Source: Rebecca billardiae RCC1528 (lineage: Eukaryota; Protista; Haptophyta). From it: a DNA stretch of 64,000 nucleotides. Positions 30,275-62,419 of this stretch are shown one piece after another (position 1 is the first letter of the stretch; the number at the start of each line of letters is the position of its first letter). The position numbers were made by a program, and so were the translations under genes. The stretch spans positions 992,001 through 1,056,000 of the forward strand of contig OZ251247.1 of NCBI GenBank assembly GCA_965240325.2. The letters are read 5' to 3'. The notes under the pieces are model-generated. The model was not told the origin of the DNA. It ran no database searches and was given only the letters and a program-made list of their open reading frames with translations.

Positions 30275-31753
30275 TCAGCGGAACGCGGTGCGCAGGGACC
30301 CGACCAATGCAGGCGTGGCCACGTGGCTCCGCTCGTCGTCGCCCACAGCGGTGCGGAGGCCGAGGCCGAGCGCGGCTGAGTGCACTCCGCACGCGTACAC
30401 GTCTCCGCACGCCGTCTCAAACAGCGAGTGGCAGTTGCCCATGGCGCAGCGGACCACGCGCGTGCGCGCCATGGCGGATACGCGTGCAGGAGCCAGCTCG
30501 CCTCCATCAGTGCGTCCGGTGCCCAGCATGCCGCCCGAGTTGAGCCCGAACTCGTGCACGCTGCCGTCCGCGCCCAGCACGGCGCTGCTAGAGGCGCCAG
30601 CGCTGGTGCGCACAGCGCGCACGGCACCAGACAGCGCCTCCATACGTTTGGGCAGGTAGAGCCTGCTGTCATCGCCGTGGCCCAGGCAGCCAGTCAAGCC
30701 ACTCCCAAAGGTGTGCACGTTACCCGCAGCGTCCACCACGAGGCTGTGCGCAACACCCGCGCTCACATGCACGGCGCGCACGCCCGCGAGCGCCTCGATG
30801 CGCCTCGGCGTGTGCTGATCCTGCTCGTCGCCGTGGCCGAGCTGGCCCAGGCCGCCATTGCCACACGAGTAGACCGCGCCACTGGTCGAGACCAGCAGAG
30901 CGTGCTCGTCCCCTCCCGATACCCCACCCACGCGCACGCCGTCCAGCGCCTCGATGCGCGTCGGCTCCCACCGGTCCTCCGTGTCGCCGTGGCCGAGCTG
31001 GCCGCAGCTGTTGTAGCCCCAGCTGTACGCACAGCCCGCGGCAGTGAGCGCGAGGCTGTGGCAGGCGCCTGCGGCAATGCATACGACGTGCTCGTGTGCG
31101 AGCGCACGGACGCACCGATATGCCCCCCGCTCAGCGTCGTAATCGTCACCGAGCACGAGATGGCCGTACTCGTTGCCGCCGCAGCCGTACACCGTCCCAG
31201 CATCGCTCAGCGCGAGCAGGTGCTCGTAGCCAGCGGCCACCGCGACCATGCGCACCGCGGAGAGCGAGACCACGCGCATCGGCACGACGGGCACGGGCGC
31301 ATCGGGGCGGCCCAACGCAGGCGGCGCGACGAACTCACCCGTCTCCCAACCGTCTTCGTCGCGCACCTTCTCCTCGCCGCACGTGTGCAGCCCGCCCTCC
31401 GCGTCCACAAACGCGCTGAAACTGAGACCGCACGCGATCGGGCTGGCGTGCGCGCACGCGAGCGAGTGCACGCGCTCACGCAAGAGAAGCAGCTCAGTCC
31501 ACGTGCACACGCTGGGCGGGAGCACGGCCGGCAGCGCGCGCTCGTGGCCCCGCGCGCGTGCGCGCTCGCGCAGCGCACGCTCGACCGGCGAGCGGCCGCC
31601 AGGCGCGCCGCGGAAGAGGCGCGCCGTGGCGTTGGCGGCGGCAAGGTCGTGCACGTCGTCGAGGCGAAAGAGGATGCGGTCCACCAGCTCGACTGGCAGA
31701 CGCGCCAGCGGTGGTGGCGGCGAGGGCGAGGTCGCGCAGTGTAGTGTCCGCAT
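30275..31753 (-). CDS. F-box-like / RCC1-repeat protein, copy 9 (492 aa), distinct N-terminus and upstream region
   Basis: Paralog starting MRTLHCATSPSPPPPLARLPVEL; its upstream 130 bp is unlike the shared spacer. Confidence 0.9.
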   Translation of the reverse strand: MRTLHCATSPSPPPPLARLPVELVDRILFRLDDVHDLAAANATARLFRGAPGGRSPVERALRERARARGHERALPAVLPPSVCTWTELLLLRERVHSLACAHASPIACGLSFSAFVDAEGGLHTCGEEKVRDEDGWETGEFVAPPALGRPDAPVPVVPMRVVSLSAVRMVAVAAGYEHLLALSDAGTVYGCGGNEYGHLVLGDDYDAERGAYRCVRALAHEHVVCIAAGACHSLALTAAGCAYSWGYNSCGQLGHGDTEDRWEPTRIEALDGVRVGGVSGGDEHALLVSTSGAVYSCGNGGLGQLGHGDEQDQHTPRRIEALAGVRAVHVSAGVAHSLVVDAAGNVHTFGSGLTGCLGHGDDSRLYLPKRMEALSGAVRAVRTSAGASSSAVLGADGSVHEFGLNSGGMLGTGRTDGGELAPARVSAMARTRVVRCAMGNCHSLFETACGDVYACGVHSAALGLGLRTAVGDDERSHVATPALVGSLRTAFR

Positions 31754-31882: not shown

Positions 31883-34800
31883 TCAGCCCGCGAAGACAAA
31901 GGCGAGCGCGTCGAGGCCGGCGCGCGCGCCGCGCACGAGGCGCGTCTCGGCCAGCCTGCCCAGCGCCTGCGTCGCGCCGAGCGCGCGTACCAGCATGGGC
32001 GCGAGCTGCGGCAGCGCGTGCAGCAGCGGCTCCTCGAGCCCGAACGTTCCGAGAAGCGACCCGCCCCACGCGGCGAGCATCGCCTCGGTGCGCGCGCGGC
32101 CGAAGAGGCGTCCGTACACGATCACGAGCGCGCACAGGCCTGCGTACGCGCCCAGCATCGCCGCCCAGCCGAGCGGCGCGCGCGCCCAGCGCGGCGGCGG
32201 CGGGCACGGGCAGAGCGCGCGCGCCCACGCGCGCGCGCGCCGCTCGGCGGCGGCGCGGCGCGCGAGCCAGATTGCAATCTCCGCCTCGCCCACGCTGAGC
32301 TCGCGGCGGCGATCGAGATCTCGCAGCAGCCGCCGCCGCTCGTGCGGCAGCAGCGGGTCGCCCAGCTCGGCCATGATCAGCCCGACGCCCGCCTCGTCCA
32401 CGCGCCCGTCGCCCGCCGAGTCGCACACAGCAAACGCGGCGCGGAGCGCGGCCAGCTCGGCGGCGCTGAGCTCCGGCCGGGCGCGGAGCAGCAGGCTGGC
32501 GCTGCGGGTGCTGCTGCTGCCGCGGCTGCTGCTGCGCGCGCTGCGGGAGCTGCTCTGCCGCGGCGGGCGCGGCGCCACCGCCGCGCCGCCGCCGCGCCCG
32601 CCGGCGGGCGCGCGCGCGGGCGAGGGCGCCGCCATGCGCTGCCGCTGCCACGCGGCGCGCCACGAGCCGCTGCCAGCGGCCCACCAGCGCGCGCTGCCGC
32701 CGCCGCCGCCGGTGCCGCCGGTGCCGGCGTGGCCGCCGCCGGTGCCGGCCGGCGCGGTACCGAGGGGCGGCACCGGCGGCGGCGCGGCGGCGGCGGGCGC
32801 GCCTCCTTCGCCGCCTCCGCCCCGCGGCGCCCGCCGCGGCGTGGGCGGCGTGCGCGCGCCGCCGGTCTCGGGCGCGACGAGCGTCGAGGGGCGGCGCGGC
32901 GCGGCCACAACGGGCGACGCCTCGCACGAGCTGGGCAGCAGCGTGGGCGGGCGGCGCGGGCCGAGCGCCACTGCGCCATCACCGCCGCCGCCGTCGTCGT
33001 CCGCGTGCGTGGCCGCAGCCGCGTTGGCGTCCGCGCACGCCGCGCCGGGCGCGGCGGCGCGCGGCGGCGGCGAGGCGCGCGGCGGCGAGGGCGGCGGCGA
33101 CTCGGCCGCCGCAGCCGCGCCGCCGCCGTCGTCGCTCAGGAGCGCGGCGGGCGCGCGCGGCGAGAGGCGCGCGCACCCGCCGCCGCCGTCGCCCGCGGCC
33201 GCCGCGCCGGCCGGCGCGGCGCCGCCTGCGAGCAGCCGCTCCGCCGACGCGCCGAGCACCGGCGCGGCGAGATTGCAATCTCCCCACTCGGCCGACGCGC
33301 TGAGCACGGGCGCGGCGACGCGCGGCCGCGCCGACGAGGCGAACGAGGCGGCGGACTCGGTGGGCGAGCCCGCCTCCTCCTCCGCCGCGCCGCCATTGCC
33401 GGCATGGCTGCCAGCATGGCCGCCGCCGCCGCCGCCAGCATGGCCGCCAGCATGGCCGCCGCCGCCGCTGCCGGCGCTCGCGGGGCGGCGGAAGGAGCCT
33501 CGGGCGGACGAGGCGGCGGAGGCGGCGGCGGACGGCGGCGGCAGCGCGACGACTGGCGGCTGGAAGCCTGGCGGCTCGGCGGCGGCGGCGGCGGACGGGC
33601 CAGCGCCGTGGTGCGTGGGCGGGGGGCTGGCAGGGGTAGGGTTGGGGGTAGGGTTGGGCCCGGCTGGCGGCGGGCCGCCCGCCGCCGCCGCGCCCGCCGC
33701 GCCGCCGCTACCGCCGCCGCCGCCATCGGCCGCGGCGGCGGCGGCGGCGCGCGGCCGCGCGGCGGCGGGCGCGCCCGCGCCGAGCGCGCCGCCGCTCCGC
33801 AGCGGCGCGACGATGCCGCAGCCGCTCGTCGGCACGTTGGGCACGCGCACGCGGCGGCGCGCGCTGCCTCCCGCGCGCGCGCAGCCGCGGCGGGGCGCGC
33901 CTTCGCCTTCGCCTTCGCCGTCGTCGTCGGCGGCGCGCGCCAGCGCCGCCGTCGGCTCGGCCGGCGCCTCGGGGCTGGCGCCGAGCGGCGGCGGCGGCGG
34001 TGCGCGCGGCCGCGGCTGCGCGCCGCCGGCCGCGCCGAACGCGAACGGCGCGGGCCCGGCGTCGGCGCTCTGCGGCGCGCCGCCGACGCCCGGCGGCGCG
34101 CCGCCGACGCCCGGCGGCGCGCGGAGCTCCGCCGCGGATGAAGCAGCGCTCAGGCCGCCGCTGCCGCCGCTGCTGCTGCTGCGGCCGGTGCGCACGGTGC
34201 TGCAGCTGGCGCGCGCGCACGCGCCCTTTGCGTGCGCGCGCGACGGCGGCGGGCGCAGCAGCAGCCGCTCGGCGCGCGCGAGCGTCTCGCCGAGCGCGGC
34301 CGCCTCGGCCGCGCGCGCGCGCACCGCGCCCCGACCCAGCCCCGAGTGCGGCTGCGGCTGCGACGGCGCCTGTAGCTGCATTTGTAACCGCAGCTGCGCC
34401 TGCAGCTGCTGCCGCGCGCTGCCCGCGCGGCGCACCGCGCCGTGCAGCCGGCTCGCGGGCGTCGCGCGCGCCTCGTCCCCGTGCGCCGCGAGCCGCCACG
34501 CCGCCTTGAAAAAAAACAGCGCAGGGAGCGCCAGCGCGGCGCCGAGCAGCGCGTACAGTGCGGTGCCCAGCGCCGAGATTGCAATCTCGCCGCCGCCGCC
34601 GGAGCCGCCGCCCTCGGGCTCGGCCGCGCGGTGCAGCGCGCACTCGAGCGCGGCTGTGAGCGCGAGCGTGTTGAACACCACCTGCACCGCCTCCGCGCGG
34701 CGCAGCCCGCGCTCGGGCGGCGTGAGCAGCAGCGCCAGCAGCGTGTGCCGATCCAAAACCGCCTCGGCCGCGGCGCGCGCGCGCGCGAGCGCGCACACGC

Positions 34801-37800
34801 GGCGCGACGCGCACGCGCCGAGCGTGCCGCGCGCGGGCGGCGCGGCGGAGAAGCGACGGCCGAGGTCGTGGTGCGCGGCGATCTCGGCGGCGATCTCGGC
34901 GGCGGCGGCGGGCGAGATGGCGCTCTCGGCGGCGGCGGTGGCCGCGGCGGTAGCGGTAGCGGCGGGCGTGCGCGCGGGCAGCACGCGCCCGCAGCGCGCG
35001 CCGCCGCCGCCGCCGCCGCCGCTGGCCGCCGATGCGGCGGCGGAGGAGGCGGCGGAGGCGGCGCTGTGCCGCGTGCGCCGCGCCTCGCGCGGCGGCGGCG
35101 GCGCGGGCGCGGGCGCGGGCGCGGCCGGCGCAGCGGCCGGCGCCGCCGCCGCCACCAACCCCGCCGCCGCCGCGCCCTCCGCCGCCGCGCCGCCCGGCTC
35201 GTCGGCGCCGGCGGCGAGATTGCAATCTCCGCCGCCCGGCTCGTCGGCGACGGTGCGCGCGCCCAGGTACGCGTCGAGCGCGGCGCTCGCCTCCGCCTCG
35301 GCGGCGGCGGCGGCGGCGGCGGCCGCCTTGCGCGCGCGCAGCCGCGCGACGGTGGTCGTGGGCTCCGCCGCGGCGCGCGGCGGCCCGGGCGGCGGCGGCG
35401 CGCCGCCGCTGCCGCGGCCGCTGCCAAAGCTGCCGCCGCCGCCGCCGCCGCCCGCGTCGCTCGCGCGCGCCGAGCCGGCCGCGCTGCGCGGCGGCGAGTG
35501 CGCCGAGCCGGGCGGCGCCGCCGAGCCGGGCGCCTCGGCGCCGGCTGCGCTGCGGCGGCGGCGGTGCCGCGAGGTGGCGGCGGCGGCGGCGGCCAGCGCG
35601 GCGGCGCTGCCGCCGGAGCTGCTGCTGCGCCAGCTGCCGCCGTCGAGCCCCGCCGCCGCCCGCTCCGCCTTGGCGCGCCACCCGCCCCGCGCCGGACTCT
35701 CCCGGACTGCCGCCCCCGAATGTCCGGACGTCGCCTTCTCGGACGCGTGCCAGCGCGCGTACTCGGCGCGCGCGCGCCGGTCGGCCGCGGCGGCGAGCAG
35801 CAGGCACAGCGCGTTGAGGCCGGAGAGGAGGTAGACTAGGCGGTACACCGTCGGGTTCTCGCGGAGGCCCTCCGCGGGCGTGGCGAGCACCGACGCGGCC
35901 TCGGCCGCGCTGAACGTGTTCACGCGCACGGACGCCGCCTCGTCCGCCGCCGCCTCGCGACTGGCGGGCACCGACAGCGCGGCAAAGTCGGTGAGGTGGG
36001 TGCACGCGCAGTAGAGCAGCGAGGGGTCGGCGCCGTCGGGCGGCGCGGGCAGCGTCGTGCACCCCTCCGCCGACCACTCGCCCCGCGCCTCGTCCCACCA
36101 GTGGCACGCGTCCACGCGGCCGCACTCGGTCCCGTGGTACGGCGGCTCGCACTCGCAGCCGCGCAGCCCGGCGCGCAGCTCGACGCACGCGCCGCGCGCG
36201 CCGCACGGCGCCGCCGCGCCGTCGGCGGCGGCGGCGGCGGCGGCGCACGACGCGGACGGCTCGATGGCCGCCGCCGCCTCTCGCGCGGGCGGCAGCCCGA
36301 GCACGACCGGCTCGCGCAGCCCCGAGATTGCAATCTCGGCGCCGGCCGTCGGGTCGCGCAGCTGCGCGCGCAGCACGGCCGTGCGCAGCGGGCCGAGCAG
36401 CGCGCCGCCGCTCTGGTTGGCGGGCTCGGCATGCACATTCGGCCCGAAGGCGATGAGCACCACGTCGACGGGCGCGTCGGGCGCGGGCGCGCCGCCGCCG
36501 CCGCCGCCGCCGCCGCCCCACAGCGCCGCAGGCAGCGCGAGCGCGCCGCCGCCGCCCGCGCCGCGGAGCGTTGCGTTGGACGCGAGCGCCGCCGCCGTGC
36601 GCCGCGCCACGCTCACGTTGACGCGCGCCGACAGCGCCTCGGCGGGCAGCTCGCCCGGGACGGCGCCGGCGAGCAGCGCGAGCGCCAGGCCCGACGCCGC
36701 CTCGAGCGCCGCGCCGCCCAGCGCCACCGCCTCCTCCGCCGTGAGCGCGCCGCCGCCGCCGCCGCCGGGCGCGCCGAGCGCGCGGTCGACCGAGTTGAGC
36801 AGCGCGCTCGCCGTGCCGCCGTCGACGCCGCCGGCCGCGGCGGCCGCGCTCGCGAGCGCGGCCGCGTGCGCGAGCCCAGCGGCGCGCGTGGGCGCGTCGA
36901 GGCGCACCGGCGCGCCCAGCGCCGCCGCGAGCGCCGCCGCCGACTGCGCGCGCGCCTCGGCGGTGGGCGGCGCGACCGCCGCGCCGTCGGCCGCGGTGAG
37001 GAGCCTTACAATCTGGGCGACGAGCGCGCTGCCGTTGCCTGCCGCGAGCGCGCGCGCGCCAGCCGGCTCCTCGGCGAGCGCGTGCGCGAGCCCGTCGAGC
37101 AGCTGCATCGCCTCCGCGTGGTCTCCGCGCCCGAGCGCGGCGCGCGCGCGGCCGAGCGCGCCCGCGAGCGCCTCCCCGCCACCGTCGTCGTCGGGAGGTT
37201 CGACGGTGACAAGCACGGCGGGCGCGCTCGCGCGCGCGCCCACCGCGTCCTCGACGGTGAGCTGCAGCGCGCGCGGCCCCGCTGGCAGCAGCACGGACGC
37301 ACTGGGCGACGCGCCCGCCACGCCGAGCGGCGTGGCCGTGCGCTCGGCCGCGCCGCCCTCGCCGCCGCCGCCGCCACTCGCGGTGGCCGCGCGGCGCTGC
37401 GCGAACGCATAGCTCAGCGGCAGCTCGTCGGAGCGCCAGCCCTCCGCGTGGACGCGGAAGTGCGTGCGCAGCGCGATGCCGCCCGCGCTCGGCGCGGCGC
37501 TGAGCGCGCCGCCGTACGGCGGCCGGCTGATCGGCACGACGATGGACGCGCGCGCAACCTGCTGCTGCTGCCGCGCCGCCGAGCCGCCGCCGCCGCCGCC
37601 GCCGCCGCCGCCCGCCGCCTGCGTCACTGTCAGCTCGAACGCATACGTCGCGCCGGGCGTGAGCGCGCCCGAGCGGAAGGCGAGCGTGTGCCCCGACCCG
37701 CCGGTCGTCGTGACGGCGGCCGTGTCGTCCAGCTCGAGCCCCGCGTCGCCCTCGGGGGCGCCGCCCGCGCCGACGAGCCGCGCGCGCCAGCGCAGCGTGT

Positions 37801-40800
37801 ACGACGCAGCGCCGCTCGCCCGGCGCGCGGCCGACTCGGCGTCGAGCGCGGTGGCGAGGGCAAGCCGCGCGCTCGGCGCGGACCAGACCGCGCTGTACGC
37901 CGCGCGGCCGAGCGGGGCGAAGGTGATCGTCGGGACGGGCGCGGCGACGAGCGTCAGCCGCACCGCCGCGCTCGCGCCCTGCGGCAGCTCGGCCGCCGCC
38001 GCCGCGCTCGGGCGCGCGTCTGTGGGCTGCCCCTTGCTCACCGCCAGCGAAACCTCGTACTCGCCCGCGGCCAGCGCGCCCGGCGGCAGCAGCAGCACGG
38101 AGGCGTTGGTCGGCACGGCCGGCGGCAGCGGCTCGGCGGCGGGCGCGGAGCCGTTCGCCCCGCCGCCGCCGCCGCGCCCGCCCGCGCCCACCGCCACCAC
38201 GCGCCACGCAAACCGCAGCCCGTCCGCCGAGCCGGTGTTCGGGTCGAGCGTCGCGGACGCGTCCAGCCGCACGGGCCGCGCGGCGGCCATGCTGCGGTCG
38301 CCGCCGGCGATGGTCGCGCGCAGCGGCAGCTGCTCGACGCGCACGCGCACGCGCGCGCTCGCCGCCGCGCCGCCGTCCGCCGCCATCGCCGCCACCACCT
38401 GCAGCTCATACGTGTGCAGCGGCGACAGGCTGAACGGCGGCAGCAGCAGCGTCGGCGCGGACGCGGAGGCGCCGCCCAGCGCCGCCGGCCGCGCGGCGCC
38501 GCCGTCCGCGGGCTCGGCGCTGCCGGTGCGCGTGACGCCGAGCAGCGACCAGCTGAAGCGCACGCGCGCGTCCGCACCCGCCCAGCAGCCCGCGACCGCC
38601 GCCGCCGCGCTGAGCAGCGTCGGCGCCTCGGCGCGCGCCACCCGGAGCGCGGGGCCGTCGACCGCGACCGTCGGCGCGCCTTCGGCGCGCGCGCGCCACA
38701 CCGTGTGCGCTGCCGGCTCGGAGAGCGAGCCGAGCATCGCCGAGCGCACGCGGAGCGCAAAGGTGAGCGCGCTCGCGCGCGGCGCGAGCGCGCCCAGCCC
38801 GGGCAGCTCGAGCGCCGCGCCGCGCTCCGCGCGCAGCCGCGCGCTCAGAGCCGCCGCCTCGGCCTCGGACACGCCGGCCGATCGGCTCCGGTCGAGCGCC
38901 CACTCGTAGGCCAGACCCGCCGCGCCGCCGCCGGCCGAGGCGGAGCCGTCCAGCCGGAGCGTGGCGTCGGGGCAGCGCGAGAGCGTGTCGGGGCCCGAGA
39001 GCGCGGCGAGCGGCGTCGGGCACGGCACGCCGACGCCGCACGGCGCGTCCGCGTCGATGGTGGCGGCGCCGGCCGCCGCGAGCGCGGACGGGTCGCACGG
39101 CGGCGAGCAGACCGAGGCCGCCGGGCGCACCGCGCCCGCGCGCAGCGCCAGCGCCGAGCCCGGGCGCACGGCGGTGCCCACGCCGAGCTGCACCACCAGC
39201 GTCGACGCAGAGGGCCAGTAGCACGCCGGCTGCTCACCCAAGTTAGGGCTAGGCTGGTCAGGGTTAGGGTTAGGGTTAGGGTTAGGGCTCGTCCGGTTGG
39301 GCCCGGCGACGAGCGCGAGCGTACCGTCGTCGAGGGCGCGCGCGCACGCGCCGAGCGCGCCGCCCATGCCCGCGCGGTCGGTCGGCTGCGCGTCGAAGCG
39401 CAGCACGACGGACGTGGCGCTGCCGTCGAGGGACGCCGACACGAGCCGCGGCGCGTGCGCACCAATAAACGCAAACGCCACGCGCGCCGCGCCCGCCTCC
39501 GCATCCTCGTCGGGCGTGAACTGCTGCCCGTTGAGCGACACGCGCACCGCCGCGGGCGCGCCACCCTCCGCGCCGCCGTAGCTCGAGCGCACGTGCACGC
39601 GCGAGTCGGTGGCGTTGGTGGGCGGCGGCGCGAGCGCGTCGCCAAAGGCCACGCGGAGCAGACCGCCGAGCCCCGCGCCGTGCAGCGCGCCAAAGCACTC
39701 GCCCTCGATCGCTGTCGGCTCGCCCGCGCCGCCCTGCGCCGGGCGGATCGAGTGCAGCGCCGGCGGCGCGTAGTAGCGGAATGGCATGCCGTCGGCGGTG
39801 GTCGTGTGCGCGCTGCCGTTGCCCAGCGAGAGCTCGAGCGCGAGCGCGAGCGCGCCGCCGCGCGCGGGCGCGGGCTCGGACGCGGGCAGCGGCGGCAGCG
39901 TGCAGCGCGCGCGCGTGCTGCCGTCCGCGCCGTCAGGCAGCATGCTCGCGCGCGCCGCGCAGCCGCCGCCGCCGTCGCCACCACCACCACCCCGCAGCAC
40001 GCAGCACAGCTCGCCCTCGCCGTACTCGGCGAAGCCAACACCCTCGAGCGTCACCACCGTGCCGCCGCCCACCGGCCCGGCGGGCGGGTGCAGCGCGGCC
40101 ACGCGCACCGCGCCCATCTCGTACAGCGAGATTGCAATCTCGTCGCCAAACAGCGAGGGCGCGGAATACGCGCCGCCGTCGAGGCGCAGGCGGACGGCGT
40201 ACCGGCCGGCGGGCAGCGCGGAGCCGTCGGCCGCGGCGGAGGGCACCGCGCACGCCGCGGCGTGCGCGCTCAGCACGGCGGCGGGCGTGCTCGCCCCCGC
40301 GCCCGCGCCGCCGCCCGCGCGCGAAAACTCGCACGCCGCGGGCCCGAGGCCGCCGCCGCCACCGCCGCCACCGTCAGCGCCGACGCCCGCCGGGCCGACA
40401 AAGCCGTCGCCGCGCAGCGTGAGCACGGCCGCCGCGCCGAGCGGCGCGCCGAGCGGCGCGCTGCCGTGCACGACGGCGCGGATGGCGGGCGGCGGCGGCG
40501 GCGCGGCCGGAGGCGAGCTCGGCGGGCGCGGCGGCGGGAACGGAAGCTGGCGCGGCGGCGGCGGCGGCGACGGCGGGCGCGGCGGCGGCGGCTGGCGTGG
40601 CGGCGGCTGGCGTGGCGGCGCGCGCGGCGGCGGCGGCGGCGGCGGCGGGCGCGAGGGCGGCGGGCTCGGCGGCGACGACGGCGGAGCGCCCGGCGGCGGC
40701 GGCTGCGCCACGCACCCACCATCGTCCACCTCCGCCGCCGAGTCGTAGTTGCGCGCGCTCGGCTCCGTGCAGCCCTGCACCACCGGCACCGGCGGCGCGA

Positions 40801-43800: not shown

Positions 43801-46800
43801 GTGGGCTCGGCGGTGGGCTCGGCGGCACGCCTGGCACCACCGATGGCGGTTGCGAGGGCGGCGGGCTCGGCAGCAGCGTGGGCGGCGGGCTCGGCGGCGG
43901 TGAGGGCGGAGGGCTCGGCGGTGGGCTCGGAAGTAGCGACGGTGGCGGGCTCGGCGGCGGGCTCGGTGGTGGCGGCTGCGGCGGTGGGCTCGGTGGCGGC
44001 GGCTGCGGCAGTGGGCTCGGTGGCGGCGATGGCGGCGGGCTCGGTGGCGGCGGCACGGGCGGTGGGCTCGGCGGCGGGCTCGGCGGCGGGCGCGGTGGCA
44101 GCGGCACGGGCGGCGGGCTCGGAGGCGGGCGCGGCGGCGGGCTCGGTGGCGGCGGCTGCGGCGGTGGGCTCGGTGGCGGCGATGGCGGCGGGCTCGGTGG
44201 CGGCGGCACGGGCGGTGGGCTCGGCGGCGGGCTCGGCGGCGGGCGCGGTGGCAGCGGCGCGGGCGTTGGGCTCGGAGGCGGGCTCGGCGGCGGGCTCGGT
44301 GGCGGCGGCTGCGGCGGTGGTGATGGTGGCGGGCTCGGCAGCGGGCTCGGTGGTGGCGGCGCGGGCGGTGGGCTGGGCGGCGGGCTCGGCGGCGGGCTCG
44401 GTGGCGGTGGCTGCGGCGGTGGTGATGGTGGCGGGCTGGGCGGCGGGCTCGGTGGCAGCGGCTGCGGCGGTGGGCTCGGTGGCGGCGATGGCGGCGGGCT
44501 CGGTGGCGGCGGCGCGGGCGGTGGGCTCGGCGGCGGGCTCGGCGGCGGCCTGGGTGGCGGCGGCGCGGGCGGTGGGCTGGGCGGCGGGCTCGGCGGCGGG
44601 CTCGGTGGCAGTGGCTGCGGCGGTGGTGATGGCGGCGGGCTGGGCGGCGGGCTCGGTGGCGGCGGCTGCGGCGGTGGGCTCGGTGGCGGCGATGGCGGCT
44701 GGCTCGGCGGCGACGGCGCGGGCAGCGGGCTCGGCGGCGGGCTTGGCGGCGGGCTCGGTGGCGGCGGCGCAGGCGGTGGGCTCGGCGGCGGGCTCGGCGG
44801 CGGGCTCGGCGGCGGGCTCGGTGGCGGCGGCTGCGGCGGTGGGCTCGGTGGCGGCGATGGCGGCGGGCTCGGTGGCGGCGGCACGGGCGGTGGGCTCGGC
44901 GGCGGGCTCGGCGGCGGGCGCGGTGGCAGCGGCACGGGCGGCGGGCTCGGAGGCGGGCGCGGCGGCGGGCTCGGTGGCGGCGGCTGCGGCGGTGGGCTCG
45001 GTGGCGGCGATGGCGGCTGGCTCGGCGGCGGCGGCGCGGGCGGTGGGCTCGGCGGCGGGCTCGGCGGCGGGCTCGGTGGCGGCGGGCTGGGCGGCGGGCT
45101 CGGTGGCGGCGGCTGCGGCGGTGGGCTCGGTGGCGGCGATGGCGGCGGGCTCGGTGGCGGCGGCACGGGCGGTGGGCTCGGCGGCGGGCTCGGCGGCGGG
45201 CGCGGTGGCAGCGGCACGGGCGGCGGGCTCGGAGGCGGGCGCGGCGGCGGGCTCGGTGGCGGCGGCTGCGGCGGTGGGCTCGGTGGCGGCGATGGCGGCT
45301 GGCTCGGCGGCGGCGGCGCGGGCGGTGGGCTCGGCGGCGGGCTCGGCGGCGGGCTCGGTGGCGGCGGGCTGGGCGGCGGGCTCGGTGGCGGCGGCTGCGG
45401 CGGTGGGCTCGGTGGCGGCGATGGCGGCGGGCTCGGTGGCGGCGGCGCGGGCGGTGGGCTCGGCGGCGGGCTCGGCGGCGGCCTGGGTGGCGGCGGCGCG
45501 GGCGGTGGGCTGGGCGGCGGGCTCGGCGGCGGGCTCGGTGGCAGTGGCTGCGGCGGTGGTGATGGCGGCGGGCTGGGCGGCGGGCTCGGTGGCGGCGGCT
45601 GCGGCGGTGGGCTCGGTGGCGGCGATGGCGGCTGGCTCGGCGGCGACGGCGCGGGCAGCGGGCTCGGCGGCGGGCTTGGCGGCGGGCTCGGTGGCGGCGG
45701 CGCAGGCGGTGGGCTCGGCGGCGGGCTCGGCGGCGGGCTCGGCGGCGGGCTCGGTGGCGGCGGCTGCGGCGGTGGGCTCGGTGGCGGCGATGGCGGCGGG
45801 CTCGGTGGCGGCGGCGCGGGCGTTGGGCTCGGAGGCGGGCTCGGCGGCGGGCTCGGTGGCGGCGGCTGTGGCGGCGGCGATGGCGGCGGGCTCGGTGGCG
45901 GCGGCGCGGGCGGTGGGCTCGGCGGCGGGCTCGGCGGCGGGCGCGGTGGCAGCGGCGCGGGCGGCGGGCTCGGAGGCGGGCGCGGCGGCGGGCTCGGTGG
46001 CGGCGGCTGCGGCGGTGGGCTCGGTGGCGGCGATGGCGGCGGGCTCGGGGGCGGCGGCGCGGGCGGTGGGCTCGGCGGCGGCGATGGCGGCGGGCTCGGT
46101 GGCGGCATCGCGGGCGGTGGGCTCGGCGGCGGCGATGGCGGCGGGCTCGGTGGTGGCGGCGCGGGCGGTGGGCTCGGCGGCGGGCTCGGCGGCGGGCTCG
46201 GTGGCGGTGGCTGCGGCGGTGGTGATGGTGGCGGGCTGGGCGGCGGGCTCGGTGGCGGCGGCGCGGGCGGTGGGCTCGGCGGCGGCGATGGCGGCGGGCG
46301 CGGTGGCGGCAGCGCGGGCGGTGAACTCGGTGGCGGGCTCGGCGGCGGGCTCGGGGGCGGCGGCGCGGGCGGTGGGCTCGGCGGCGGCGATGGCGGCGGG
46401 CTCGGTGGCGGCGGCGCGGGCGGTGGGCTCGGCGGCGGCGATGGCGGCGGGCTCGGTGGCGGCGGCGCGGGCGATGGGCTCGGCGGCGGCGATGGCGGCG
46501 GGCTCGGTGGTGGCGGTGCAGGCGGTGGGCTCGGCGGCGGCGATGGCGGCGGGCTCGGTGGCGGCAGCTGCGGCGGTGGGCTCGGTGGCGGGCTCGGCGG
46601 CGGGCTCGGTGGCGGCGGCGCGGGCGGTGGGCTCGGCGGCGGCGATGGCGGCGGGCGCGGTGGCGGCAGCGCGGGCGGTGGACTCGGTGGCGGGCTCGGC
46701 GGCGGGCTCGGTGGCGGCGGCGCGGGCGGTGGGCTCGGCGGCGGCGACGGCGGCGGGCTCGGTGGTGGCGGTGCGGGCGGTGGGCTCGGCGGCGGCGATG

Positions 46801-49800
46801 GCGGCGGGCTCGGTGGCGGCAGCTGCGGCGGTGGGCTCGGTGGCGGGCTCGGCGGCGGGCTCGGTGGCGGCGGCGCGGGCGGTGGGCTCGGCGGCGGCGA
46901 TGGCGGCGGGCTCGGTGGTGGCGGTGCGGGCGGTGGGCTCGGCGGCGGCGATGGCGGAGGGCGCGGTGGCGGCAGCGCGGGCGGTGGGCTCGGTGGCGGG
47001 CTCGGCGGCGGGCTCGGTGGCGGCGGCGCGGGCGGTGGGCTCGGCGGCGGCGATGGCGGTGGGCGCGGTGGCGGCAGCGCGGGCGGTGGACTCGGTGGCG
47101 GGCTCGGCGGCGGGCTCGGGGGCGGCGGCGCGGGCGGTGGGCTCGGCGGCGGCGATGGCGGCGGGCTCGGAGGCGGCGGCGCCGGCGGTGGGCTCGGCGG
47201 CGGCGATGGCGGCGGGCTCGGTGGCTGCGGCGCGGGCGGTGGGCTCGGCGGCGGCGATGGCGGCGGGCTCGGTGGCGGCAGCGCGGGCGGTGGGCTCGGC
47301 GGCGGCGATGGCGGCGGACTCGGTGGCGGCGGCGCGGGCGGTGGGCTCGGCGGCGGCGATGGCGGCGGGCGCGGTGGCGGCAGCGCGGGCGGTGGACTCG
47401 GTGGCGGGCTCGGCGGCGGGCTCGGGGGCGGCGGCGCGGGCGGTGGGCTCGGCGGCGGCGATGGCGGCGGGCTCGGTGGCGGCGGCGCGGGCGGTGGGCT
47501 CGGCGGCGGCGATGGCGGCGGGCTCGGTGGCGGCGGCGCGGGCGGTGGGCTCGGCGGCGGCGATGGCGGCGGGCTCGGTGGCGGCGGCGCGGGCGGTGGG
47601 CTCGGCGGCGGCGATGGCGGCGGGCTCGGTGGTGGCGGTGCAGGCGGTGGGCTCGGCGGCGGCGATGGCGGCGGGCTCGGTGGCGGCAGCTGCGGCGGTG
47701 GGTTCGGTGGCGGGCTCGGCGGCGGGCTCGGTGGCGGCGGCGCGGGCGGTGGGCTCGGCGGCGGCGATGGCGGCGGGCGCGGTGGCGGCAGCGCGGGCGG
47801 TGGACTCGGTGGCGGGCTCGGCGGCGGGCTCGGTGGCGGCGGCGCGGGCGGTGGGCTCGGCGGCGGCGATGGCGGCGGGCTCGGTGGTGGCGGTGCGGGC
47901 GGTGGGCTCGGCGGCGGCGATGGCGGCGGGCTCGGTGGCGGCAGCTGCGGCGGTGGGCTCGGTGGCGGGCTCGGCGGCGGGCTCGGTGGCGGCGGCGCGG
48001 GCGGTGGGCTCGGCGGCGGCGATGGCGGCGGGCTCGGTGGTGGCGGTGCGGGCGGTGGGCTCGGCGGCGGCGATGGCGGCGGGCGCGGTGGCAGCAGCGC
48101 GGGCGGTGGGCTCGGTGGCGGGCTCGGCGGCGGGCTCGGTGGCGGCGGCGCGGGCGGTGGGCTCGGCGGCGGCGATGGCGGCGGGCGCGGTGGCGGCAGC
48201 GCGGGCGGTGGACTCGGTGGCGGGCTCGGCGGCGGGCTCGGTGGCGGCGGCGCGGGCGGTGGGCTCGGCGGCGGCGATGGCGGCGGGCTCGGTGGCGGCA
48301 GCTGCGGCGGTGGGCTCGGTGGCGGGCTCGGCGGCGGGCTCGGTGGTGGCGGTGCGGGCGGTGGGCTCGGCGGCGGCGATGGCGGCGGGCGCGGTGGCGG
48401 CAGCGCGGGCGGTGGGCTCGGTGGCGGGCTCGGCGGCGGGCTCGGGGGCGGCGGCGCGGGCGGTGGGCTCGGCGGCGGCGATGGCGGCGGGCTCGGTGGC
48501 GGCGGCGCGGGCGGTGGGCTCGGCGGCGGCGATGGCGGCGGGCTCGGTGGCGGCGGTGCGGGCGGTGGGCTCGGCGGCGGCGATGGCGGCGGGCTCGGTG
48601 GCGGCGGCTGCGGCGGTGGGCTCGGCGGCGGCGATGGCGGCGGGCTCGGTGGCGGCGGCTGCGGCGGTGGGCTCGGTGGCGGCGATGGCGGCGGGCTCGG
48701 TGGCGGCGGCGCGGGCGGTGGGCTCGGCGGCGGCGATGGCGACGGGCTCGGTGGCGGCGGCGCGGGCGGTGGGCTCGGCGGCGGCGATGGCGGCGGGCTC
48801 GGTGGTGGCGGTGCGGGCGGTGGGCTCGGCGGTGGCGATGGCGGCGGGCTCGGTGGTGGCGGCGCGGGCGGTGGGCTCGGCGGCGGGCTCGGCGGCGGGC
48901 TCGGTGGCGGTGGCTGCGGCGGTGGTGATGGTGGCGGGCTCGGCGGCGGGCTCGGTGGCGGCGGCGCGGGCGGTGGGCTCGGCGGCGGCGATGGCGGCGG
49001 GCTCGGTGGCGGCGGCGCGGGCGGTGGTGATGGTGGCGGGCTCGGCGGCGGGCTCGGAGGCGGCGGCGCCGGCGGTGGGCTCGGCGGCGGCGATGGCGGC
49101 GGGCTCGGTGGCGGTGGCTGCGGCGGTGGTGATGGTGGCGGGCTCGGCAGCGGGCTCGGTGGCGGCGGCGCGGGTGGTGGGCTCGGCGGCGGCGATGGCG
49201 GCGGGCTCGGTGGCGGCGGCGCCGGCGGTGGGCTCGGCGGCGGCGATGGCGGCGGGCTCGGTGGCGGCGGCGCGGGCCGTGGGCTCGGCGGTGGCGATGG
49301 CGGCGGGCTCGGTGGTGGCGGCGCGGGCGGTGGGCTCGGCGGCGGGCTCGGCGGCGGGCTCGGTGGCGGTGGCTGCGGCGGTGGTGATGGTGGCGGGCTC
49401 GGCGGCGGGCTCGGTGGCGGCGGCGCGGGCGGTGGGCTCGGCGGCGGCGATGGCGGCGGGCTCGGTGGCGGCGGCGCGGGCGGTGGGCTCGGCGGCGGCG
49501 ATGGCGGCGTGCTCGGTGGCGGCGGCCTCGGCGGCGGCCTCGGCGGCGGCCTCGGCGGCGGCCTCGGCGGCGGCCTCGGCGGCGGCGAGAAGGGCGGGAG
49601 CGCGTCGCACGGCGCGCGCAGGTCCAGCCGGAGGGCACCGTCAGCGGCCGAGGCGTCGCCGTTGTGAAGGTGGACGGGGCGCGCGTCGTAGCAGCTGGGG
49701 CAGCTGAGCGCGAGGACGAGCGTGCTCAGGTTGGCGCACCAGCGCAGCGGCGGCGCGGGCAGCGCCGCCGGCCCGCCGCCGCCGCCCAGCTCGAGCGTCG

Positions 49801-50035
49801 TACTCACATTTACCCACGCGCCCGGCAGCGCGTACTGGAGCGGGTAATCGGGGTATTCGGTGGCGGGGTCCGTGAGGTTGAAGCGCGCGAGTGCGACGGC
49901 CTCGTCGCACGCGGCGCCCTCGTGCGGCGCGGCGCACAGCCAGCCGCGCAGCCCGAGCGCCCAGTAGAACGGCGCGACGCCATCGTTACTCACGTGCGCG
50001 CCCAATCGGAGCGCGGCGGGCGCGGCCGGCTCGGA

Positions 50036-50069
<34 letters not shown>

Positions 50070-51178
50070 AGCGGCGTCAGCGTCACACGCGCGACGCCGA
50101 GCGCGTAGCCGAGGCGCTCGGCGCCGGCCTCGGCGCGCGCGCGCTCCTCGTCGTCCGTGTACAGCCCCGCCAGCGCGTGCGCGTTCACCAGGAACGACGC
50201 GTGCGTCTCGTTCACCGCCAGCTCGAACGGCTGCGCCGTGACCGGGTCGGCGACGAGGGGCGGCGCGGCCGCGTACGCGTCGGTGAAGACCTGCGGCTGG
50301 AGTCCGGGGGAGAGCTCGCCGCCGATGATGCGCGTGTGCCACTGCGTGTACGGCGCGCGCCCGTAGAACGCGTTGAAGTCCCAGATCTGCGTGAGGAAGA
50401 ACCACGGGACCGACGGCGCATAAGTCGACCAGCAAAAAGAATCGTCATGGAAGCCCGTCGTGTGCTCGAGCACAGAGACGGCGGTGCGCGTCTGCACGTG
50501 CGTGGCGGCGGTGAAGTTGGCGGCGTACGCGTCGAGCACCGCCGCGCGCGTGCTCGGCGGCGCGAACAGCCCGTCGTTCGGCCACGTGTGCCACTCGCCC
50601 CAGTGACCCAGCAGCCCCGCCTGCACGACCGCGACGCGCGGATCGAGATTGTATCTCGCGCCGAGCTGGGCGATGAAGTGGACGAGGCAGGCGACGAGCG
50701 CGGGGTCGGCGTAGTCGGGCGACTGCCCGCCGCCGTGCTCCGTGTACGCCGTCATCCCCAGCCCGCCGTCCAGCAGGTACTGCGGCACGCCCGTGAAACT
50801 TCCGGGAAGGTCCAGCCAGAAGCGCGCGACCACGTGGCGCGCCTTGGCGGCGGCGGCGTCGAGCTTGGCGTCGAAGGCGGACCAGTCGTAGGCGCGCTCG
50901 GCCGTCACCACCTCGCGCACGGGCACCATCAGCAGGTCGAGCGACGCGTCCCACACGCCCGCGTCCCACCAGTCGTGCGGGTTGGTCAGGAACCCCTGGT
51001 ACGGGTTGGACCGGTGCGGCAGTCCGGTCCGGTTGGGCGGGCCGAGGTCCGGGGAGAGCTCGACGGGCGGGAGCGTGTCGCCCGCGCGCGCCGGCGCGGG
51101 CGTGCGCGCGGCGCCGAGCACGAGCACGAGCGCCGCCGCGGCGCGCGCGCGGGGGCGCGGCGCGGCGTGATGCGGCAT
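31883..51178 (-). CDS. Giant (~6,431 aa) polycystin-1/REJ-like membrane protein with DUF4832-like glycoside-hydrolase head, extensin-like stalk, GPS site and EF-hands
   Basis: ATG at 51178 followed by a signal-like AAAALVLVLGAA. GH-like NPYQGF..YDWSAFD..SPDYADP..GLLGHWGEWH..GFHDDSF..LGY..NDGVAPFYW (~49620-51010). SPPP repeats. GCTEPSARNYDSAAEVDDGGC. IPT-like LHPPAGPVGGGTVVTLEG and VSLNGQQFT. REJ-like LDASATLDPN and RPPYGG..F.V.A.GW..LPLSYAF. EGF-like CGARGAC..CECEPPYHGTEC. GPS CHWW..W..EGC..CACTHLTDFA (~35980-36108). PKD1-like TM segments (HTLLALL..R; VYGRLFG..EEPL). EF-hand-like AFAVCDSAGDGRVDEAGV. Small in-frame introns cannot be excluded. Confidence 0.88.
32269..32280. repeat. Palindrome core AGATTGCAATCT (13/14 match to GAGATTGCAATCTC), coding EIAIW
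   Basis: Read directly from sequence. Confidence 0.85.
33269..33282. repeat. 14-bp palindrome GAGATTGCAATCTC (coding GDCNL) at a tandem-duplication junction
   Basis: Flanking 32-bp direct repeats at 33239-33270 and 33287-33318. Confidence 0.95.
34575..34588. repeat. 14-bp palindrome GAGATTGCAATCTC (coding EIAIS)
   Basis: Adjacent to a (GCC)n tract. Confidence 0.95.
35216..35229. repeat. 14-bp palindrome GAGATTGCAATCTC (coding GDCNL) at a tandem-duplication junction
   Basis: Exact 20-bp direct repeats at 35188-35207 and 35230-35249. Confidence 0.95.
36324..36337. repeat. 14-bp palindrome GAGATTGCAATCTC (coding EIAIS); symmetry extends to 18 bp
   Basis: CCGAGATTGCAATCTCGG at 36322-36339. 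Confidence 0.95.
39264..39287 (+). repeat. Interstitial telomere-like (TTAGGG)4, in frame in the giant ORF (PNPNPNPN)
   Basis: Read directly; one more unit at 39243-39248. Confidence 0.9.
40128..40141. repeat. 14-bp palindrome GAGATTGCAATCTC (coding EIAIS)
   Basis: Read directly from sequence. Confidence 0.95.
41070..49600 (-). repeat. Coding minisatellite encoding ~2,840 aa of Ser-Pro3-4 (extensin/pherophorin-like) repeats
   Basis: Continuous GGCGGCGGGCTC-type repeats in two zones (SPPP(A/Q)PPPP at ~43960-49600; SLPP/VVPGVPP/LTPIPP at ~41070-43960). Exact 540-bp tandem duplication near 41970-43060. Confidence 0.95.
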
Positions 51179-51698
51179 GGCTACGAGCTGCTGGGCTCTC
51201 CGTGGCTGCCACTGAAGGGACGAACTTGCCGCCCGAGAAGTGATCGGCTGAACATAGTTAAAAATAGACTGACCGCGCAAACCGAAATGGCGCGCCTGGC
51301 GCTGATTGGCTCAGCGCGAACGACATGTGAACCCCGAGTACTCGTCGCTTGCATCAATCAAGATCGTCGTAGTTGATGCTGATGATCATTGTCGGTCCGG
51401 GCGTGAGGCGGCGGAAGGAATCTCGCACGAAGGACGACCCGCGAACGAAGCAGTGCGCGCGATGATCGCCGACGCCACGGCCCACGCCACGCCTTGCTTA
51501 GGAGCTGCGCTCGTCGGCTCATCTCGCTGCCCGTCGGCTGGCAGGCTGCGTCAGCTAGAGTAGTCAGCCGCGCCGCCCGGCGCTGCTTAACCAGCTATAG
51601 TAGCACGCGGGCAGCGTGCGGGCCGCCGCCATGCTGCGCACACGCCGACGGCAGCTGATGCCAGGTACTGAATGACCCGCGCCAAGCGCGGCCCGCGG

Positions 51699-62132: not shown

Positions 62133-62171
<39 letters not shown>

Positions 62172-62383: not shown

Positions 62384-62419
<36 letters not shown>

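What the first reader, a model, noticed from the sequence alone, without database searches (positions are those of the whole stretch)
31883..51178. Giant polycystin-1-like receptor with a glycoside-hydrolase-like head on a ~2,800-residue proline stalk
Seen: one 19.3 kb open frame in the order signal peptide, GH-like domain, SPPP stalk, SEA-like segment, GC..NY..DDG.C motif, IPT, REJ, EGF, GPS (HL/T), TMs, EF-hands, TMs. Established: REJ plus GPS with HL/T autoproteolysis characterises PKD1-family proteins; Ser-Pro repeats are hydroxyproline glycosylation substrates in plants and green algae; polyproline II rises ~0.31 nm per residue. Inference: a fully extended stalk would be ~0.9 micrometre, presenting a glycan-binding or glycan-cutting head far from the membrane (surface filament, adhesion or prey sensing). 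The ORF ends without a recognisable TRP-like channel domain. I do not know of this architecture being described.
Basis: partly seen in the sequence, partly recalled or inferred. Interest (0 to 1): 0.8.

Follow-up and report, generated by a model that had tools for sequence, protein, structure and literature searches.

The report
Giant stalked half-polycystin surface receptor
A very GC-rich haptophyte-type alga has one uninterrupted 19.3 kb reading frame for a 6,431-residue surface protein: a sugar-cutting-type enzyme domain at the tip of a Ser-Pro rod up to about 0.9 micrometre long, anchored by the self-cleaving front half of a polycystin-1-type receptor that has no channel half. Expression has not been shown.

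Summary
Window 31883-51178 (minus strand) is one stop-free frame of 6,431 codons, and its codon bias stays in phase from end to end.

Confirmed parts:
- a glycoside-hydrolase-fold head (DUF4874/DUF4832 family)
- a 2,843-residue Ser-Pro-Pro-Pro stalk
- three IPT/TIG domains
- a REJ module
- a GAIN/GPS domain with the HL/T motif
- five predicted membrane helices
- no PLAT or channel domain

The EF-hand pair is homologous to canonical ones in relatives but degenerate here. The "SEA-like" segment is conserved but unproven.

The organism is not a green alga. The closest relatives (about 40% identity) are REJ/EF-hand proteins of Pavlovales haptophytes. In Diacronema lutheri the genomic frame also starts with a signal peptide and about 2,000 residues of SPPP repeats, which the public gene model leaves out. 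The stalk-plus-REJ-GPS design is therefore a conserved family; so far the enzyme head is peculiar to this gene.

The general idea, a hydroxyproline-type rod on a polycystin-like anchor, was published for Chlamydomonas MST3 in 2024. That protein uses a different anchor.

This scan had already noted two paralogues on other pieces of this genome.

No sequencing run was listed, so transcript continuity, glycosylation, cleavage and location remain untested. I file it as a new variant of a known kind.

The parts
51080..51178 (-). Start codon and signal-peptide-like N-terminus (aa 1-33: basic stretch, Ala/Leu/Val core, ARA|G)
   Evidence: Read from the translation. No predictor was run.
49595..51079 (-). 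Head, aa 34-528: DUF4874/DUF4832-family (beta/alpha)8 glycoside-hydrolase-like domain with a C-terminal beta-sandwich. The family-invariant glutamates E195 (WGEWH) and E288 (IGGE) are kept.
   Evidence: Model pLDDT 78, pTM 0.82. Foldseek matches GH35 at E 3e-8. VIA Z 14-17 to GH14/GH35/GH5/GH42. A bacterial relative sits in a sugar-transporter/melibiase operon.
41069..49597 (-). Stalk, aa 528-3370 (2,843 aa): SPPP tetrapeptide array. The distal part (about aa 573-2345) is a regular 17-residue unit, SPPPSPPPSPPP[A/Q]PPPP (51 nt, about 112 copies). The proximal part (about aa 2400-3370) is more varied, with Leu/Val-containing inserts.
40775..41065 (-). Conserved post-stalk alpha/beta module, aa 3372-3468 ('SEA-like'). 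It lacks the G/SVVV-type site.
   Evidence: Conserved in D. lutheri, P0029 and P0031. No Pfam SEA hit. No Atlas lead.
40706..40774 (-). GC..NY..DDG.C two-cysteine motif, aa 3469-3491
   Evidence: Present in the sequence; also in P0031 and, degenerate, in D. lutheri.
40487..40705 (-). Second proline-rich linker, aa 3492-3564 (73 aa)
39464..40480 (-). Three IPT/TIG-type Ig-like domains, aa 3567-3905
   Evidence: Weak Pfam TIG hit. 37% identity, E 1e-58, to the TIG-positive region of D. lutheri P0178.
37097..39463 (-). REJ module, aa about 3906-4694
   Evidence: Pfam REJ at 92 and 76 bits. phmmer gives 43% identity over 1,142 aa to the Pavlovales REJ proteins.
35954..37096 (-). GAIN-like region, aa about 4695-5075: helical part, EGF-like insert (aa about 4978-5023) and GPS. 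The predicted cleavage site HL|T is at aa 5061-5063 (nt 35990-35998).
   Evidence: Pfam GPS 29.8 bits, above cut-off; EGF_2 weak. The motif is conserved in 12 of 15 relatives. The family profile hits adhesion-GPCR GAIN domains at E 1e-11 to 1e-5.
35780..35848 (-). Membrane helix 1, aa 5111-5133
   Evidence: Hydropathy; conserved in the family.
34505..34699 (-). Membrane helices 2 and 3, aa about 5494-5558, with the family motifs HTLL..RAE..Q..F...EC.L and AL.(L/I)PAL
32264..32467 (-). Cytosolic EF-hand pair, aa about 6238-6305. It is homologous to canonical pairs in relatives, but both loops are degenerate here.
   Evidence: Pfam 18.4 bits, below the cut-off of 30. Relatives score 34-46 bits. 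The family profile matches calmodulin at E 1e-22 or better.
31883..32176 (-). Membrane helices 4 and 5 (aa about 6335-6395, with the conserved EEP motif), a short tail and the stop codon
   Evidence: The C-terminus aligns with the ends of the D. lutheri and CCMP2436 proteins.

Best explanation
This is one intron-poor gene of a Pavlovales-type haptophyte. It encodes a very large multi-pass surface glycoprotein.

Shown by sequence: after a signal peptide the chain runs in this order:
- a glycoside-hydrolase-fold head with both family-invariant glutamates
- 2,843 residues of Ser-Pro-Pro-Pro repeats
- a small conserved module with a two-cysteine motif
- a 73-residue Pro linker
- three IPT/TIG domains
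- a REJ module
- a GAIN/GPS domain with the HL/T motif
- five membrane helices, with large disordered cytosolic loops and a degenerate EF-hand pair

Inferred: the Ser-Pro array is hydroxylated and O-glycosylated and forms a stiff polyproline-II rod up to about 0.9 micrometre long. The rod holds the enzyme-type head far outside the cell or flagellar membrane. The ectodomain is cut at HL/T and stays non-covalently attached, as in polycystin-1 and adhesion GPCRs. Pulling or binding at the head then loads the GAIN joint, and the signal or shedding event passes to the 5-helix part and its cytosolic loops, or to a partner protein.

The gene belongs to a lineage-specific family of stalked REJ-GPS receptors whose heads differ: none in the D. 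lutheri relative, other heads in paralogues of this genome. It shares only the front half of polycystin-1.
For: - Single frame with phase-locked codon bias and no stops.
- In the stalk the third codon position varies most (entropy 1.46 against 1.13 and 0.99), while positions 1-2 keep Pro and Ser. This is what a coding repeat gives.
- Head homology, fold and conserved glutamates. A bacterial relative lies in a sugar-utilisation operon.
- REJ and GPS score above Pfam's cut-offs. GAIN is supported by the profile search against solved adhesion-GPCR GAIN domains. HL/T is conserved across the family.
- Family membership: 43% identity over 1,142 aa to D. lutheri and CCMP2436 proteins, with the same order IPT-REJ-EGF-GPS-helix-EF-hand-helices.
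- Independent support for stalk and receptor being one gene: the D. lutheri genomic frame L002:4144-21816 (5,890 aa) starts with a signal peptide and about 2,000 aa of SPPP, in frame with the same module order. A second, unnamed contig (L001) has an in-frame P/S-rich run reaching the contig end, just upstream of the same post-stalk module.
- A relative is transcribed: an MMETSP transcript belongs to the cluster of P0043.
- Rod behaviour of long glycosylated polyproline helices, and their use on a polycystin-type anchor, is experimentally shown for Chlamydomonas MST3 (PMC11015965).
- Haptophytes carry ExAD-like GT47 genes (PMC5371791).
Against: - There is no RNA or read evidence for this gene; no run was listed.
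- The annotated D. lutheri model has three in-frame, stop-free introns of 99-213 nt. Similar short introns could hide in the low-complexity loops here.
- The stalk length depends on correct assembly of 8.5 kb of repeats.
- Hydroxyproline glycosylation is not documented for haptophytes in what I read.
- The EF-hand loops of this copy are degenerate, and the IQ-like helix of relatives is missing, so the cytosolic signalling part may be decayed.
- The head is below Pfam's gathering score for DUF4874 (27.7 against 30.1), and its substrate is unknown.
- No relative with the same head on a stalk was found.
Confidence: 0.6

Rival explanations
1. The protein is the core of a single-molecule flagellar or haptonemal hair. 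The glycosylated rod is the hair itself, possibly coated by partner proteins on the more varied proximal repeats, and the REJ-GPS base anchors it in the ciliary membrane. This would be a functional analogue of the Chlamydomonas mastigoneme core MST3, with an enzyme at its tip.
For: - The rod length of about 0.88 micrometre is close to the roughly 0.8-0.9 micrometre mastigoneme built on MST3, which also joins a hydroxyproline-rich helix to a polycystin-type membrane part (PMC11015965).
- REJ/GPS proteins of brown algae are candidate receptors of male gametes, whose lectin-like receptor sits on the anterior flagellum (PMC4700764).
- From my own memory, not checked here: Pavlovales flagella bear fine non-tubular hairs.
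- A follow-up note on a paralogue reached the same idea (s1-343718), but this is not independent evidence.
Against: - Nothing here shows localisation.
- The anchor is not homologous to MST3's PKD2-like domain: no PKD_channel match.
- No MST1-like partner was looked for.
- An enzyme head has no counterpart in mastigonemes.
Confidence: 0.25
2. The head is used as a binding module, not an enzyme. On this reading the protein is an adhesion or recognition receptor for prey, substrate, mates or bacteria, in the manner of sea-urchin REJ and brown-algal REJ proteins, with the rod only giving reach.
For: - REJ-family receptors with carbohydrate-binding heads act in gamete recognition (PMC4700764).
- Chlamydomonas PKD-type proteins often carry carbohydrate-binding domains (PMC11015965).
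- A paralogue in this genome is reported to carry a lectin array instead (s1-363204; not checked by me).
Against: Both family-invariant glutamates, and the other invariant residues of the DUF4832 family, are retained. This is not expected if catalysis had been given up. The two readings are not exclusive.
Confidence: 0.2
3. The giant frame is partly an artefact. Possible forms are two neighbouring genes joined by a stop-free GC-rich satellite, a mis-assembled repeat, or a gene no longer expressed.
For: - At 80-87% GC, long ORFs arise in all frames; ORFs of 2,800-3,000 codons lie on both strands over the repeat.
- No reads were available.
- Degenerate EF-hands and microsatellite-filled loops hint at relaxed constraint in the tail.
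Against: - Only this frame is open over all 19.3 kb.
- All recognised domains lie in it, in the order seen in relatives.
- Two relatives from other organisms have the same in-frame stalk upstream of the same module.
- The head ends directly in the repeat, with no stop, no drop in GC3 and no new start or signal peptide after the stalk.
Confidence: 0.1

Closest known systems
Pavlovales REJ/EF-hand proteins (Diacronema lutheri KAG8459354.1 and KAG8462819.1; Pavlovales sp. CCMP2436 KAJ1635852.1 and KAJ1633484.1)
   Same: True homologues: about 40% identity over more than 1,100 aa. They share the order IPT/TIG-REJ-EGF-GPS(HLT)-helix 1-helices 2/3-EF-hand pair-helices 4/5. The D. lutheri locus has the same signal peptide, SPPP stalk, post-stalk module and Cys motif in its genomic frame.
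   Different: None of them has the glycosidase-type head. The D. lutheri stalk starts straight after the signal peptide and is about 2,000 aa. The D. lutheri protein has about ten extra repeated domains before the IPTs. Their EF-hands are canonical and they have an IQ-like helix after helix 1. The public models are truncated and carry only domain-based or 'hypothetical' names.
Chlamydomonas reinhardtii MST3 (also called Mstax), the mastigoneme axial protein (PMC11015965)
   Same: A giant hydroxyproline-rich-type protein whose polyproline-II helix spans hundreds of nanometres. It is tied to the membrane by a polycystin-family part and has a long disordered cytosolic region. The overall length is similar.
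   Different: MST3 is anchored by a PKD2-like channel domain that lacks helix S1 and is completed by SIP. It has no REJ or GPS according to that paper's text. Here the anchor is REJ-GAIN/GPS plus 5 helices, with no channel-like match. MST3 has no enzyme head. Any similarity is of design, not demonstrated homology.
Polycystin-1 / sea-urchin REJ / PKDREJ family
   Same: A REJ module directly followed by a GAIN/GPS domain with HL/T, then the first membrane helix. All have a very large modular ectodomain.
   Different: There is no PLAT domain after helix 1. There are five helices rather than eleven. There is no PKD-channel-like last six helices. It lacks the LRR, C-type lectin and PKD repeats. It has an EF-hand inside a cytosolic loop.
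Ectocarpus Esi0130_0068 (REJ+GPS male-gamete receptor candidate, PMC4700764)
   Same: An algal REJ+GPS membrane protein outside animals.
   Different: It is 1,427 aa, has no stalk and no enzyme head, and has 6-7 helices with a reported polycystin-channel signature.
Extensins, algal HRGPs and the pond glycofibril TLP-4 (PMC11725842)
   Same: Ser-Pro(3) tetrapeptide periodicity. [quoted passage not shown]
   Different: The stalk has no Tyr cross-link motifs, the lineage is different, and the modification state is unknown. The protein behind TLP-4 is unknown.
Bacterial DUF4832/DUF4874 proteins
   Same: The head is 34-39% identical to them and keeps all 24 invariant residues of the alignment.
   Different: They are free-standing proteins of about 460 aa, several with lipoprotein-like signals. 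One lies in a sugar-uptake operon. Here the domain is fused to a eukaryotic receptor.

Membership tests
Polycystin-1 (PKD1) family | REJ module | tested here: met
   Pfam PF02010 at 92 and 76 bits against a cut-off of 25.
Polycystin-1 (PKD1) family | GPS/GAIN with the HL/T autoproteolysis motif just before the first membrane helix | tested here: met
   PF01825 at 29.8 bits, above the 22.5 cut-off. CxCxHLT at aa 5057-5063. Profile hits to solved GAIN domains. Cleavage itself was not tested.
Polycystin-1 (PKD1) family | PLAT/LH2 domain in the first cytosolic loop | tested here: not met
   No PLAT hit at E<=1 in the window protein, or at E<=0.1 in four relatives.
Polycystin-1 (PKD1) family | Eleven membrane helices, the last six forming a PKD/TRP-channel-like domain | tested here: not met
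   Five hydrophobic helices. No PKD_channel or Ion_trans hit. The PDB profile and the fold search of a relative's tail gave only EF-hand matches. That model was of low confidence (pLDDT 61).
Adhesion GPCR | GAIN domain followed by a secretin-type seven-helix domain | tested here: not met
   GAIN-like region: yes. No 7tm hit, and only five helices.
Glycoside hydrolase (clan GH-A-like, DUF4832/DUF4874) | Sequence membership in the family | tested here: met
   phmmer E 3e-55 to 1e-38 against proteins carrying PF16116 and PF16173. The window's own Pfam hit to DUF4874 is just under the cut-off (27.7 against 30.1), with no direct DUF4832 hit.
Glycoside hydrolase (clan GH-A-like, DUF4832/DUF4874) | (beta/alpha)8 barrel with two carboxylates at strand ends | tested here: met
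   Model pTM 0.82. Z 14-17 to GH14/GH35/GH5/GH42 barrels. The invariant glutamates of WGEWH and IGGE sit at strand ends. Their catalytic roles are inferred.
Glycoside hydrolase (clan GH-A-like, DUF4832/DUF4874) | Measured hydrolytic activity and substrate | not testable with these tools
   I found no characterised member in the papers searched.
Extensin / hydroxyproline-rich glycoprotein | Ser-Pro(3-5) repeats | tested here: met
   431 SPPP units in 2,843 aa.
Extensin / hydroxyproline-rich glycoprotein | Prolyl hydroxylation with Hyp-arabinosides and Ser-galactose | not testable with these tools
   Only indirect: ExAD-like GT47 genes are reported in haptophytes (PMC5371791).
Extensin / hydroxyproline-rich glycoprotein | Tyr-containing cross-link motifs | tested here: not met
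   No Tyr codon among the stalk codons.
MST3-type mastigoneme core | PKD2-like membrane domain completed by SIP; MST1 coat; ciliary location | tested here: not met
   No PKD-channel-like domain was detected. Partners and location were not tested.
SEA domain | Pfam SEA profile / G|SVVV site | tested here: not met
   No SEA hit at E<=1. The window has ...ASARVVLAYF... at the place where two relatives have SVVV/SIVV-like strings. The fold was not predicted.
EF-hand calcium sensor | Canonical 12-residue loops | tested here: inconclusive
   Homologous to canonical pairs in relatives. Here it scores 18.4 bits against a cut-off of 30. Loop 1 has Ala at position 3 and Gly at position 12; loop 2 has Arg at position 3 and Leu at position 6.

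The most novel reading that the evidence does not exclude
The fine, non-tubular hairs of pavlovophyte flagella (or a comparable surface fuzz) may be single molecules of this family. Each hair would be one glycosylated Ser-Pro rod rooted in the membrane by a self-cleaving REJ-GAIN joint, with interchangeable tips: none, lectin arrays, or here a working glycosidase. The cell would then carry enzymes and sensors about a micrometre out into the boundary layer and could feel or shed them through the GPS cut. This would be a second, independent invention of the polycystin-anchored hydroxyproline rod seen in the Chlamydomonas mastigoneme.
Probability: 0.2. Interest if true: 0.85.

Novelty: new variant of a known kind. 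Interest (0 to 1): 0.6.

Why it matters
- It extends the idea of a stiff glycoprotein rod on a polycystin-type anchor from one green alga to a distant lineage, with a different anchor (REJ-GAIN/GPS rather than a PKD2-like channel). That points to a general way for protists to build micrometre-long surface appendages from a single polypeptide.
- An enzyme-fold domain at the tip of such a rod, behind a force-sensitive self-cleaving joint, is an unusual combination. It gives a concrete, testable candidate for the molecular identity of haptophyte flagellar or surface hairs.
- It gives an uncharacterised DUF family a context in which to look for a substrate.
- It shows that public haptophyte gene models cut these proteins at the repeat. 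The family and its stalks are therefore invisible in protein databases: the whole-length search found nothing, while the domain search found 537 relatives.

Tried and rejected
- **Sequencing runs:** none was listed for window:35000-41000. Read laying was therefore not used, and continuity, splicing and expression could not be tested.
- **Whole-length word search** (3,540-11,250 aa candidates) on residues 3400-5150: nothing. This is explained by truncated public models.
- **Third word search** on a relative's C-terminal region: it was swamped by low-complexity candidates and returned only itself and one D. lutheri protein. The taxonomic range of the 5-helix/EF-hand module stays unknown.
- **PDB sequence search with the head:** only chance hits.
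- **Fold of the C-terminal region:** done on the compact D. lutheri relative. It was of low confidence (pLDDT 61) and matched only calmodulin-like EF-hands. Absence of a channel fold is therefore supported but not proven.
- **ESM Atlas on the post-stalk module:** no usable lead.
- **Exact look-up of a neighbouring RCC1 protein:** not on record. The genome itself is not in the collection, and the species was not identified beyond 'Pavlovales-like'.
- **Green-alga origin:** considered at first because of the Ser-Pro repeats and high GC, then rejected on the identity of all close relatives.
- **Names for the closest head relatives:** looked up, none given. Gene transfer from bacteria is plausible but untested, and no tree was built.
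- **The repeat finder on the stalk**: it only restated the tandem array.

Full report
**1. Is the frame real?**

The window is extremely GC-rich, 80-87% over 32-50 kb. ORFs of thousands of codons therefore appear in several frames on both strands.

One frame stands apart. 31883..51280 (-) has 6,465 codons with no stop, while the other five frames over the same DNA have 17-59 stops. From the first ATG (51178) it encodes 6,431 aa. In 100-codon blocks, GC3 is 0.86-0.98 and GC2 is the lowest position throughout the non-repeat parts, from the first block to the last. The coding phase is therefore kept over the whole length, with no room for a frame-shifting intron.

In the repeat, positions 1-2 are nearly fixed as CC, AG or TC. 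Position 3 varies most, with entropy 1.46 against 1.13 and 0.99. CCA makes up 25% of Pro codons there, against 2% elsewhere. This fits a translated repeat rather than a neutral satellite.

**2. What are the parts?** (coordinates)

*Head, aa 34-528.*
- Its relatives are proteins of about 460 aa carrying PF16116 (DUF4832) and PF16173 (DUF4874), at E 3e-55 to 1e-38 and 34-39% identity.
- The few named ones are bacterial, and several have lipoprotein-type signals.
- One sits next to a melibiase and a sugar ABC transporter.
- In an alignment of 28 sequences, 24 columns are invariant. They include the Glu of WGEWH and the Glu of IGGE, which are aa 195 and 288 of the protein.
- The AlphaFold model (pLDDT 78, pTM 0.82) is a (beta/alpha)8 barrel plus a beta-sandwich. 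It matches GH35 beta-galactosidases by Foldseek (E 3e-8) and GH14, GH35, GH5 and GH42 barrels at Z 14-17.
- 'GH-like head' is therefore confirmed at the level of fold and family. No member has a measured activity in the papers I searched.

*Stalk, aa 528-3370.*
- It has 2,843 residues, 70% Pro and 18% Ser, with 431 SPPP units.
- The distal two-thirds is a 51-nt (17-aa) unit in about 112 copies at 85% match.
- The proximal third is more varied, with Leu/Val-containing inserts.
- At 0.31 nm per residue this gives 881 nm. That is the figure the MST3 paper uses: 429 residues for 133 nm.

*Base of the ectodomain.*
- A 97-aa module and a two-cysteine GC..NY..DDG.C motif follow the stalk. Both are conserved in relatives. 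They have no Pfam SEA hit and gave no Atlas lead.
- Next comes a 73-aa Pro linker.
- Then come three IPT/TIG domains. They are weak in Pfam, but 37% identical (E 1e-58) to the TIG-positive region of the D. lutheri protein.
- Next is the REJ module at 92 bits.
- After it comes a helical stretch, a weak EGF hit, and GPS above Pfam's cut-off.
- A profile of this region from ten family members hits the GAIN domains of solved adhesion GPCRs at E 1e-11 to 1e-5.
- CxCxHLTxF is conserved in 12 of 15 relatives.

*Membrane part.*
- Alignment of the tails shows a conserved plan: helix 1; an IQ-like helix (absent in the window protein); helices 2 and 3; a variable disordered loop; an EF-hand pair; helices 4 and 5 with an EEP motif; then the end.
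- The window protein ends where the relatives end, so the gene is complete at its 3' end.
- I found no PLAT, PKD_channel or seven-helix domain in it or in four relatives.
- The PDB profile search and the fold search of the compact D. lutheri tail returned only EF-hands, and that model was weak.
- The window's EF-hand loops are degenerate. Its cytosolic loops are inflated with Ala/Gly/Pro-rich, microsatellite-like sequence.

**3. Whose gene is it, and is the design conserved?**

An exhaustive phmmer search with aa 4000-5150 found 537 relatives, 24 of them at E<=1e-30. The best named ones are from Diacronema lutheri and Pavlovales sp. CCMP2436, both haptophytes.

D. lutheri has 73% GC and 45% single-exon genes (PMC8379373), which matches the look of this window. 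The window's genome itself is not in the collections.

The key result is at the D. lutheri locus. There the genomic frame L002:4144-21816 has 5,890 codons. It starts with a signal peptide and runs straight into about 2,000 residues of SPPP repeats. The same post-stalk module, Cys motif, Pro linker, IPT, REJ, EGF, GPS, helices and EF-hand follow. The deposited model (3,751 aa) starts after the stalk.

A second contig from an unnamed run shows an in-frame P/S-rich run up to the contig end, just before the same module.

The stalk and the receptor therefore belong together in at least three organisms. None of these relatives has the enzyme head.

Two earlier notes of this scan describe paralogues on other pieces of the same genome with other heads or two rods. 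I did not check them.

**4. How it probably works.**

Shown: the domain order, the conserved catalytic-type residues, the conserved HL/T motif and the topology.

Inferred:
- The rod is hydroxylated and glycosylated, and stiff. This is by analogy with extensins and MST3; haptophytes have ExAD-like GT47 genes (PMC5371791).
- The ectodomain is cut at the GPS and held non-covalently.
- Load or ligand at the head acts on that joint.
- With five helices and no channel half, any ion flux would need a partner.

The MST3 paper proposes that dense, regular proline runs make free rods, while more intricate patterns bind partners. On that rule the distal 17-mer array would be a bare rod, and the varied proximal third could carry a coat.

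**5. Comparison with what is known.**

The protein works like a polycystin-1 or adhesion-GPCR front half on an extensin-type rod. It is not a member of the PKD1 family in the strict sense, because PLAT and the channel-like helices were tested and not found. It is not homologous to MST3's anchor.

It is a member of an undescribed Pavlovales family that databases label 'EF-hand domain-containing' or 'REJ domain-containing'. In the papers searched I found none that describes this family, its stalks, or a glycosidase-fold head on such a receptor.

**6. Limits.**

- No reads were available, so expression, splicing, repeat length, cleavage, glycosylation and location are all untested.
- Short in-frame introns cannot be excluded. 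The D. lutheri model has three, of 99-213 nt, all stop-free, although the first of them looks like a predictor's way round a Pro linker.
- The species is inferred only from relatives.

Noticed in passing
L002:4144-21816 (Diacronema lutheri JAGTXO010000041.1): The public model KAG8459354.1 (3,751 aa) is truncated. The genomic frame has 5,890 codons and begins with a signal peptide plus about 2,000 aa of SPPP repeats that no gene model covers. The model's first 'intron' (213 nt, in frame, stop-free) removes a Pro-rich linker and looks like a prediction artefact.
   Followed up: partly
window 6290-20109 and 28309-31753, minus strand: A tandem array of nine genes of about 500 aa, each with an F-box-like N-terminus and an RCC1 propeller. 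They are spaced about 2 kb apart and end 130 nt downstream of the giant gene. The array is interrupted by an 8 kb stretch of lower GC (20-28 kb) with no Pfam hits.
   Followed up: partly
window 61283-63868, minus strand: An ORF of 861 aa with a strong GT41 (O-GlcNAc transferase / SPINDLY-type) match, E 4e-76, about 10 kb upstream of the giant Ser-rich glycoprotein gene. Whether the proximity means anything is unknown.
   Followed up: no
window 5-3330: A GC-rich satellite with a 208/421-nt period and at least 13 copies at 91-94% match, running off the window start. It generates long spurious ORFs in all frames.
   Followed up: no
window 41069-49597: The stalk DNA has a strong strand asymmetry: GC skew +0.33 to +0.38 and AT skew down to -0.66 on the plus strand. 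It uses CCA for a quarter of its Pro codons, against 2% in the rest of the gene.
   Followed up: partly
window 32162-35607: The cytosolic loops of the receptor are filled with short in-frame microsatellite-like repeats (periods 12-66 nt). The IQ-like helix found after helix 1 in relatives is missing.
   Followed up: partly
L003:162-6419 (Logan SRR31343320 contig): A bacterial DUF4832/DUF4874 gene lies directly after two ABC sugar permeases, a solute-binding protein and a melibiase-family gene. This is a context clue that the uncharacterised family acts on galactoside-type sugars.
   Followed up: no
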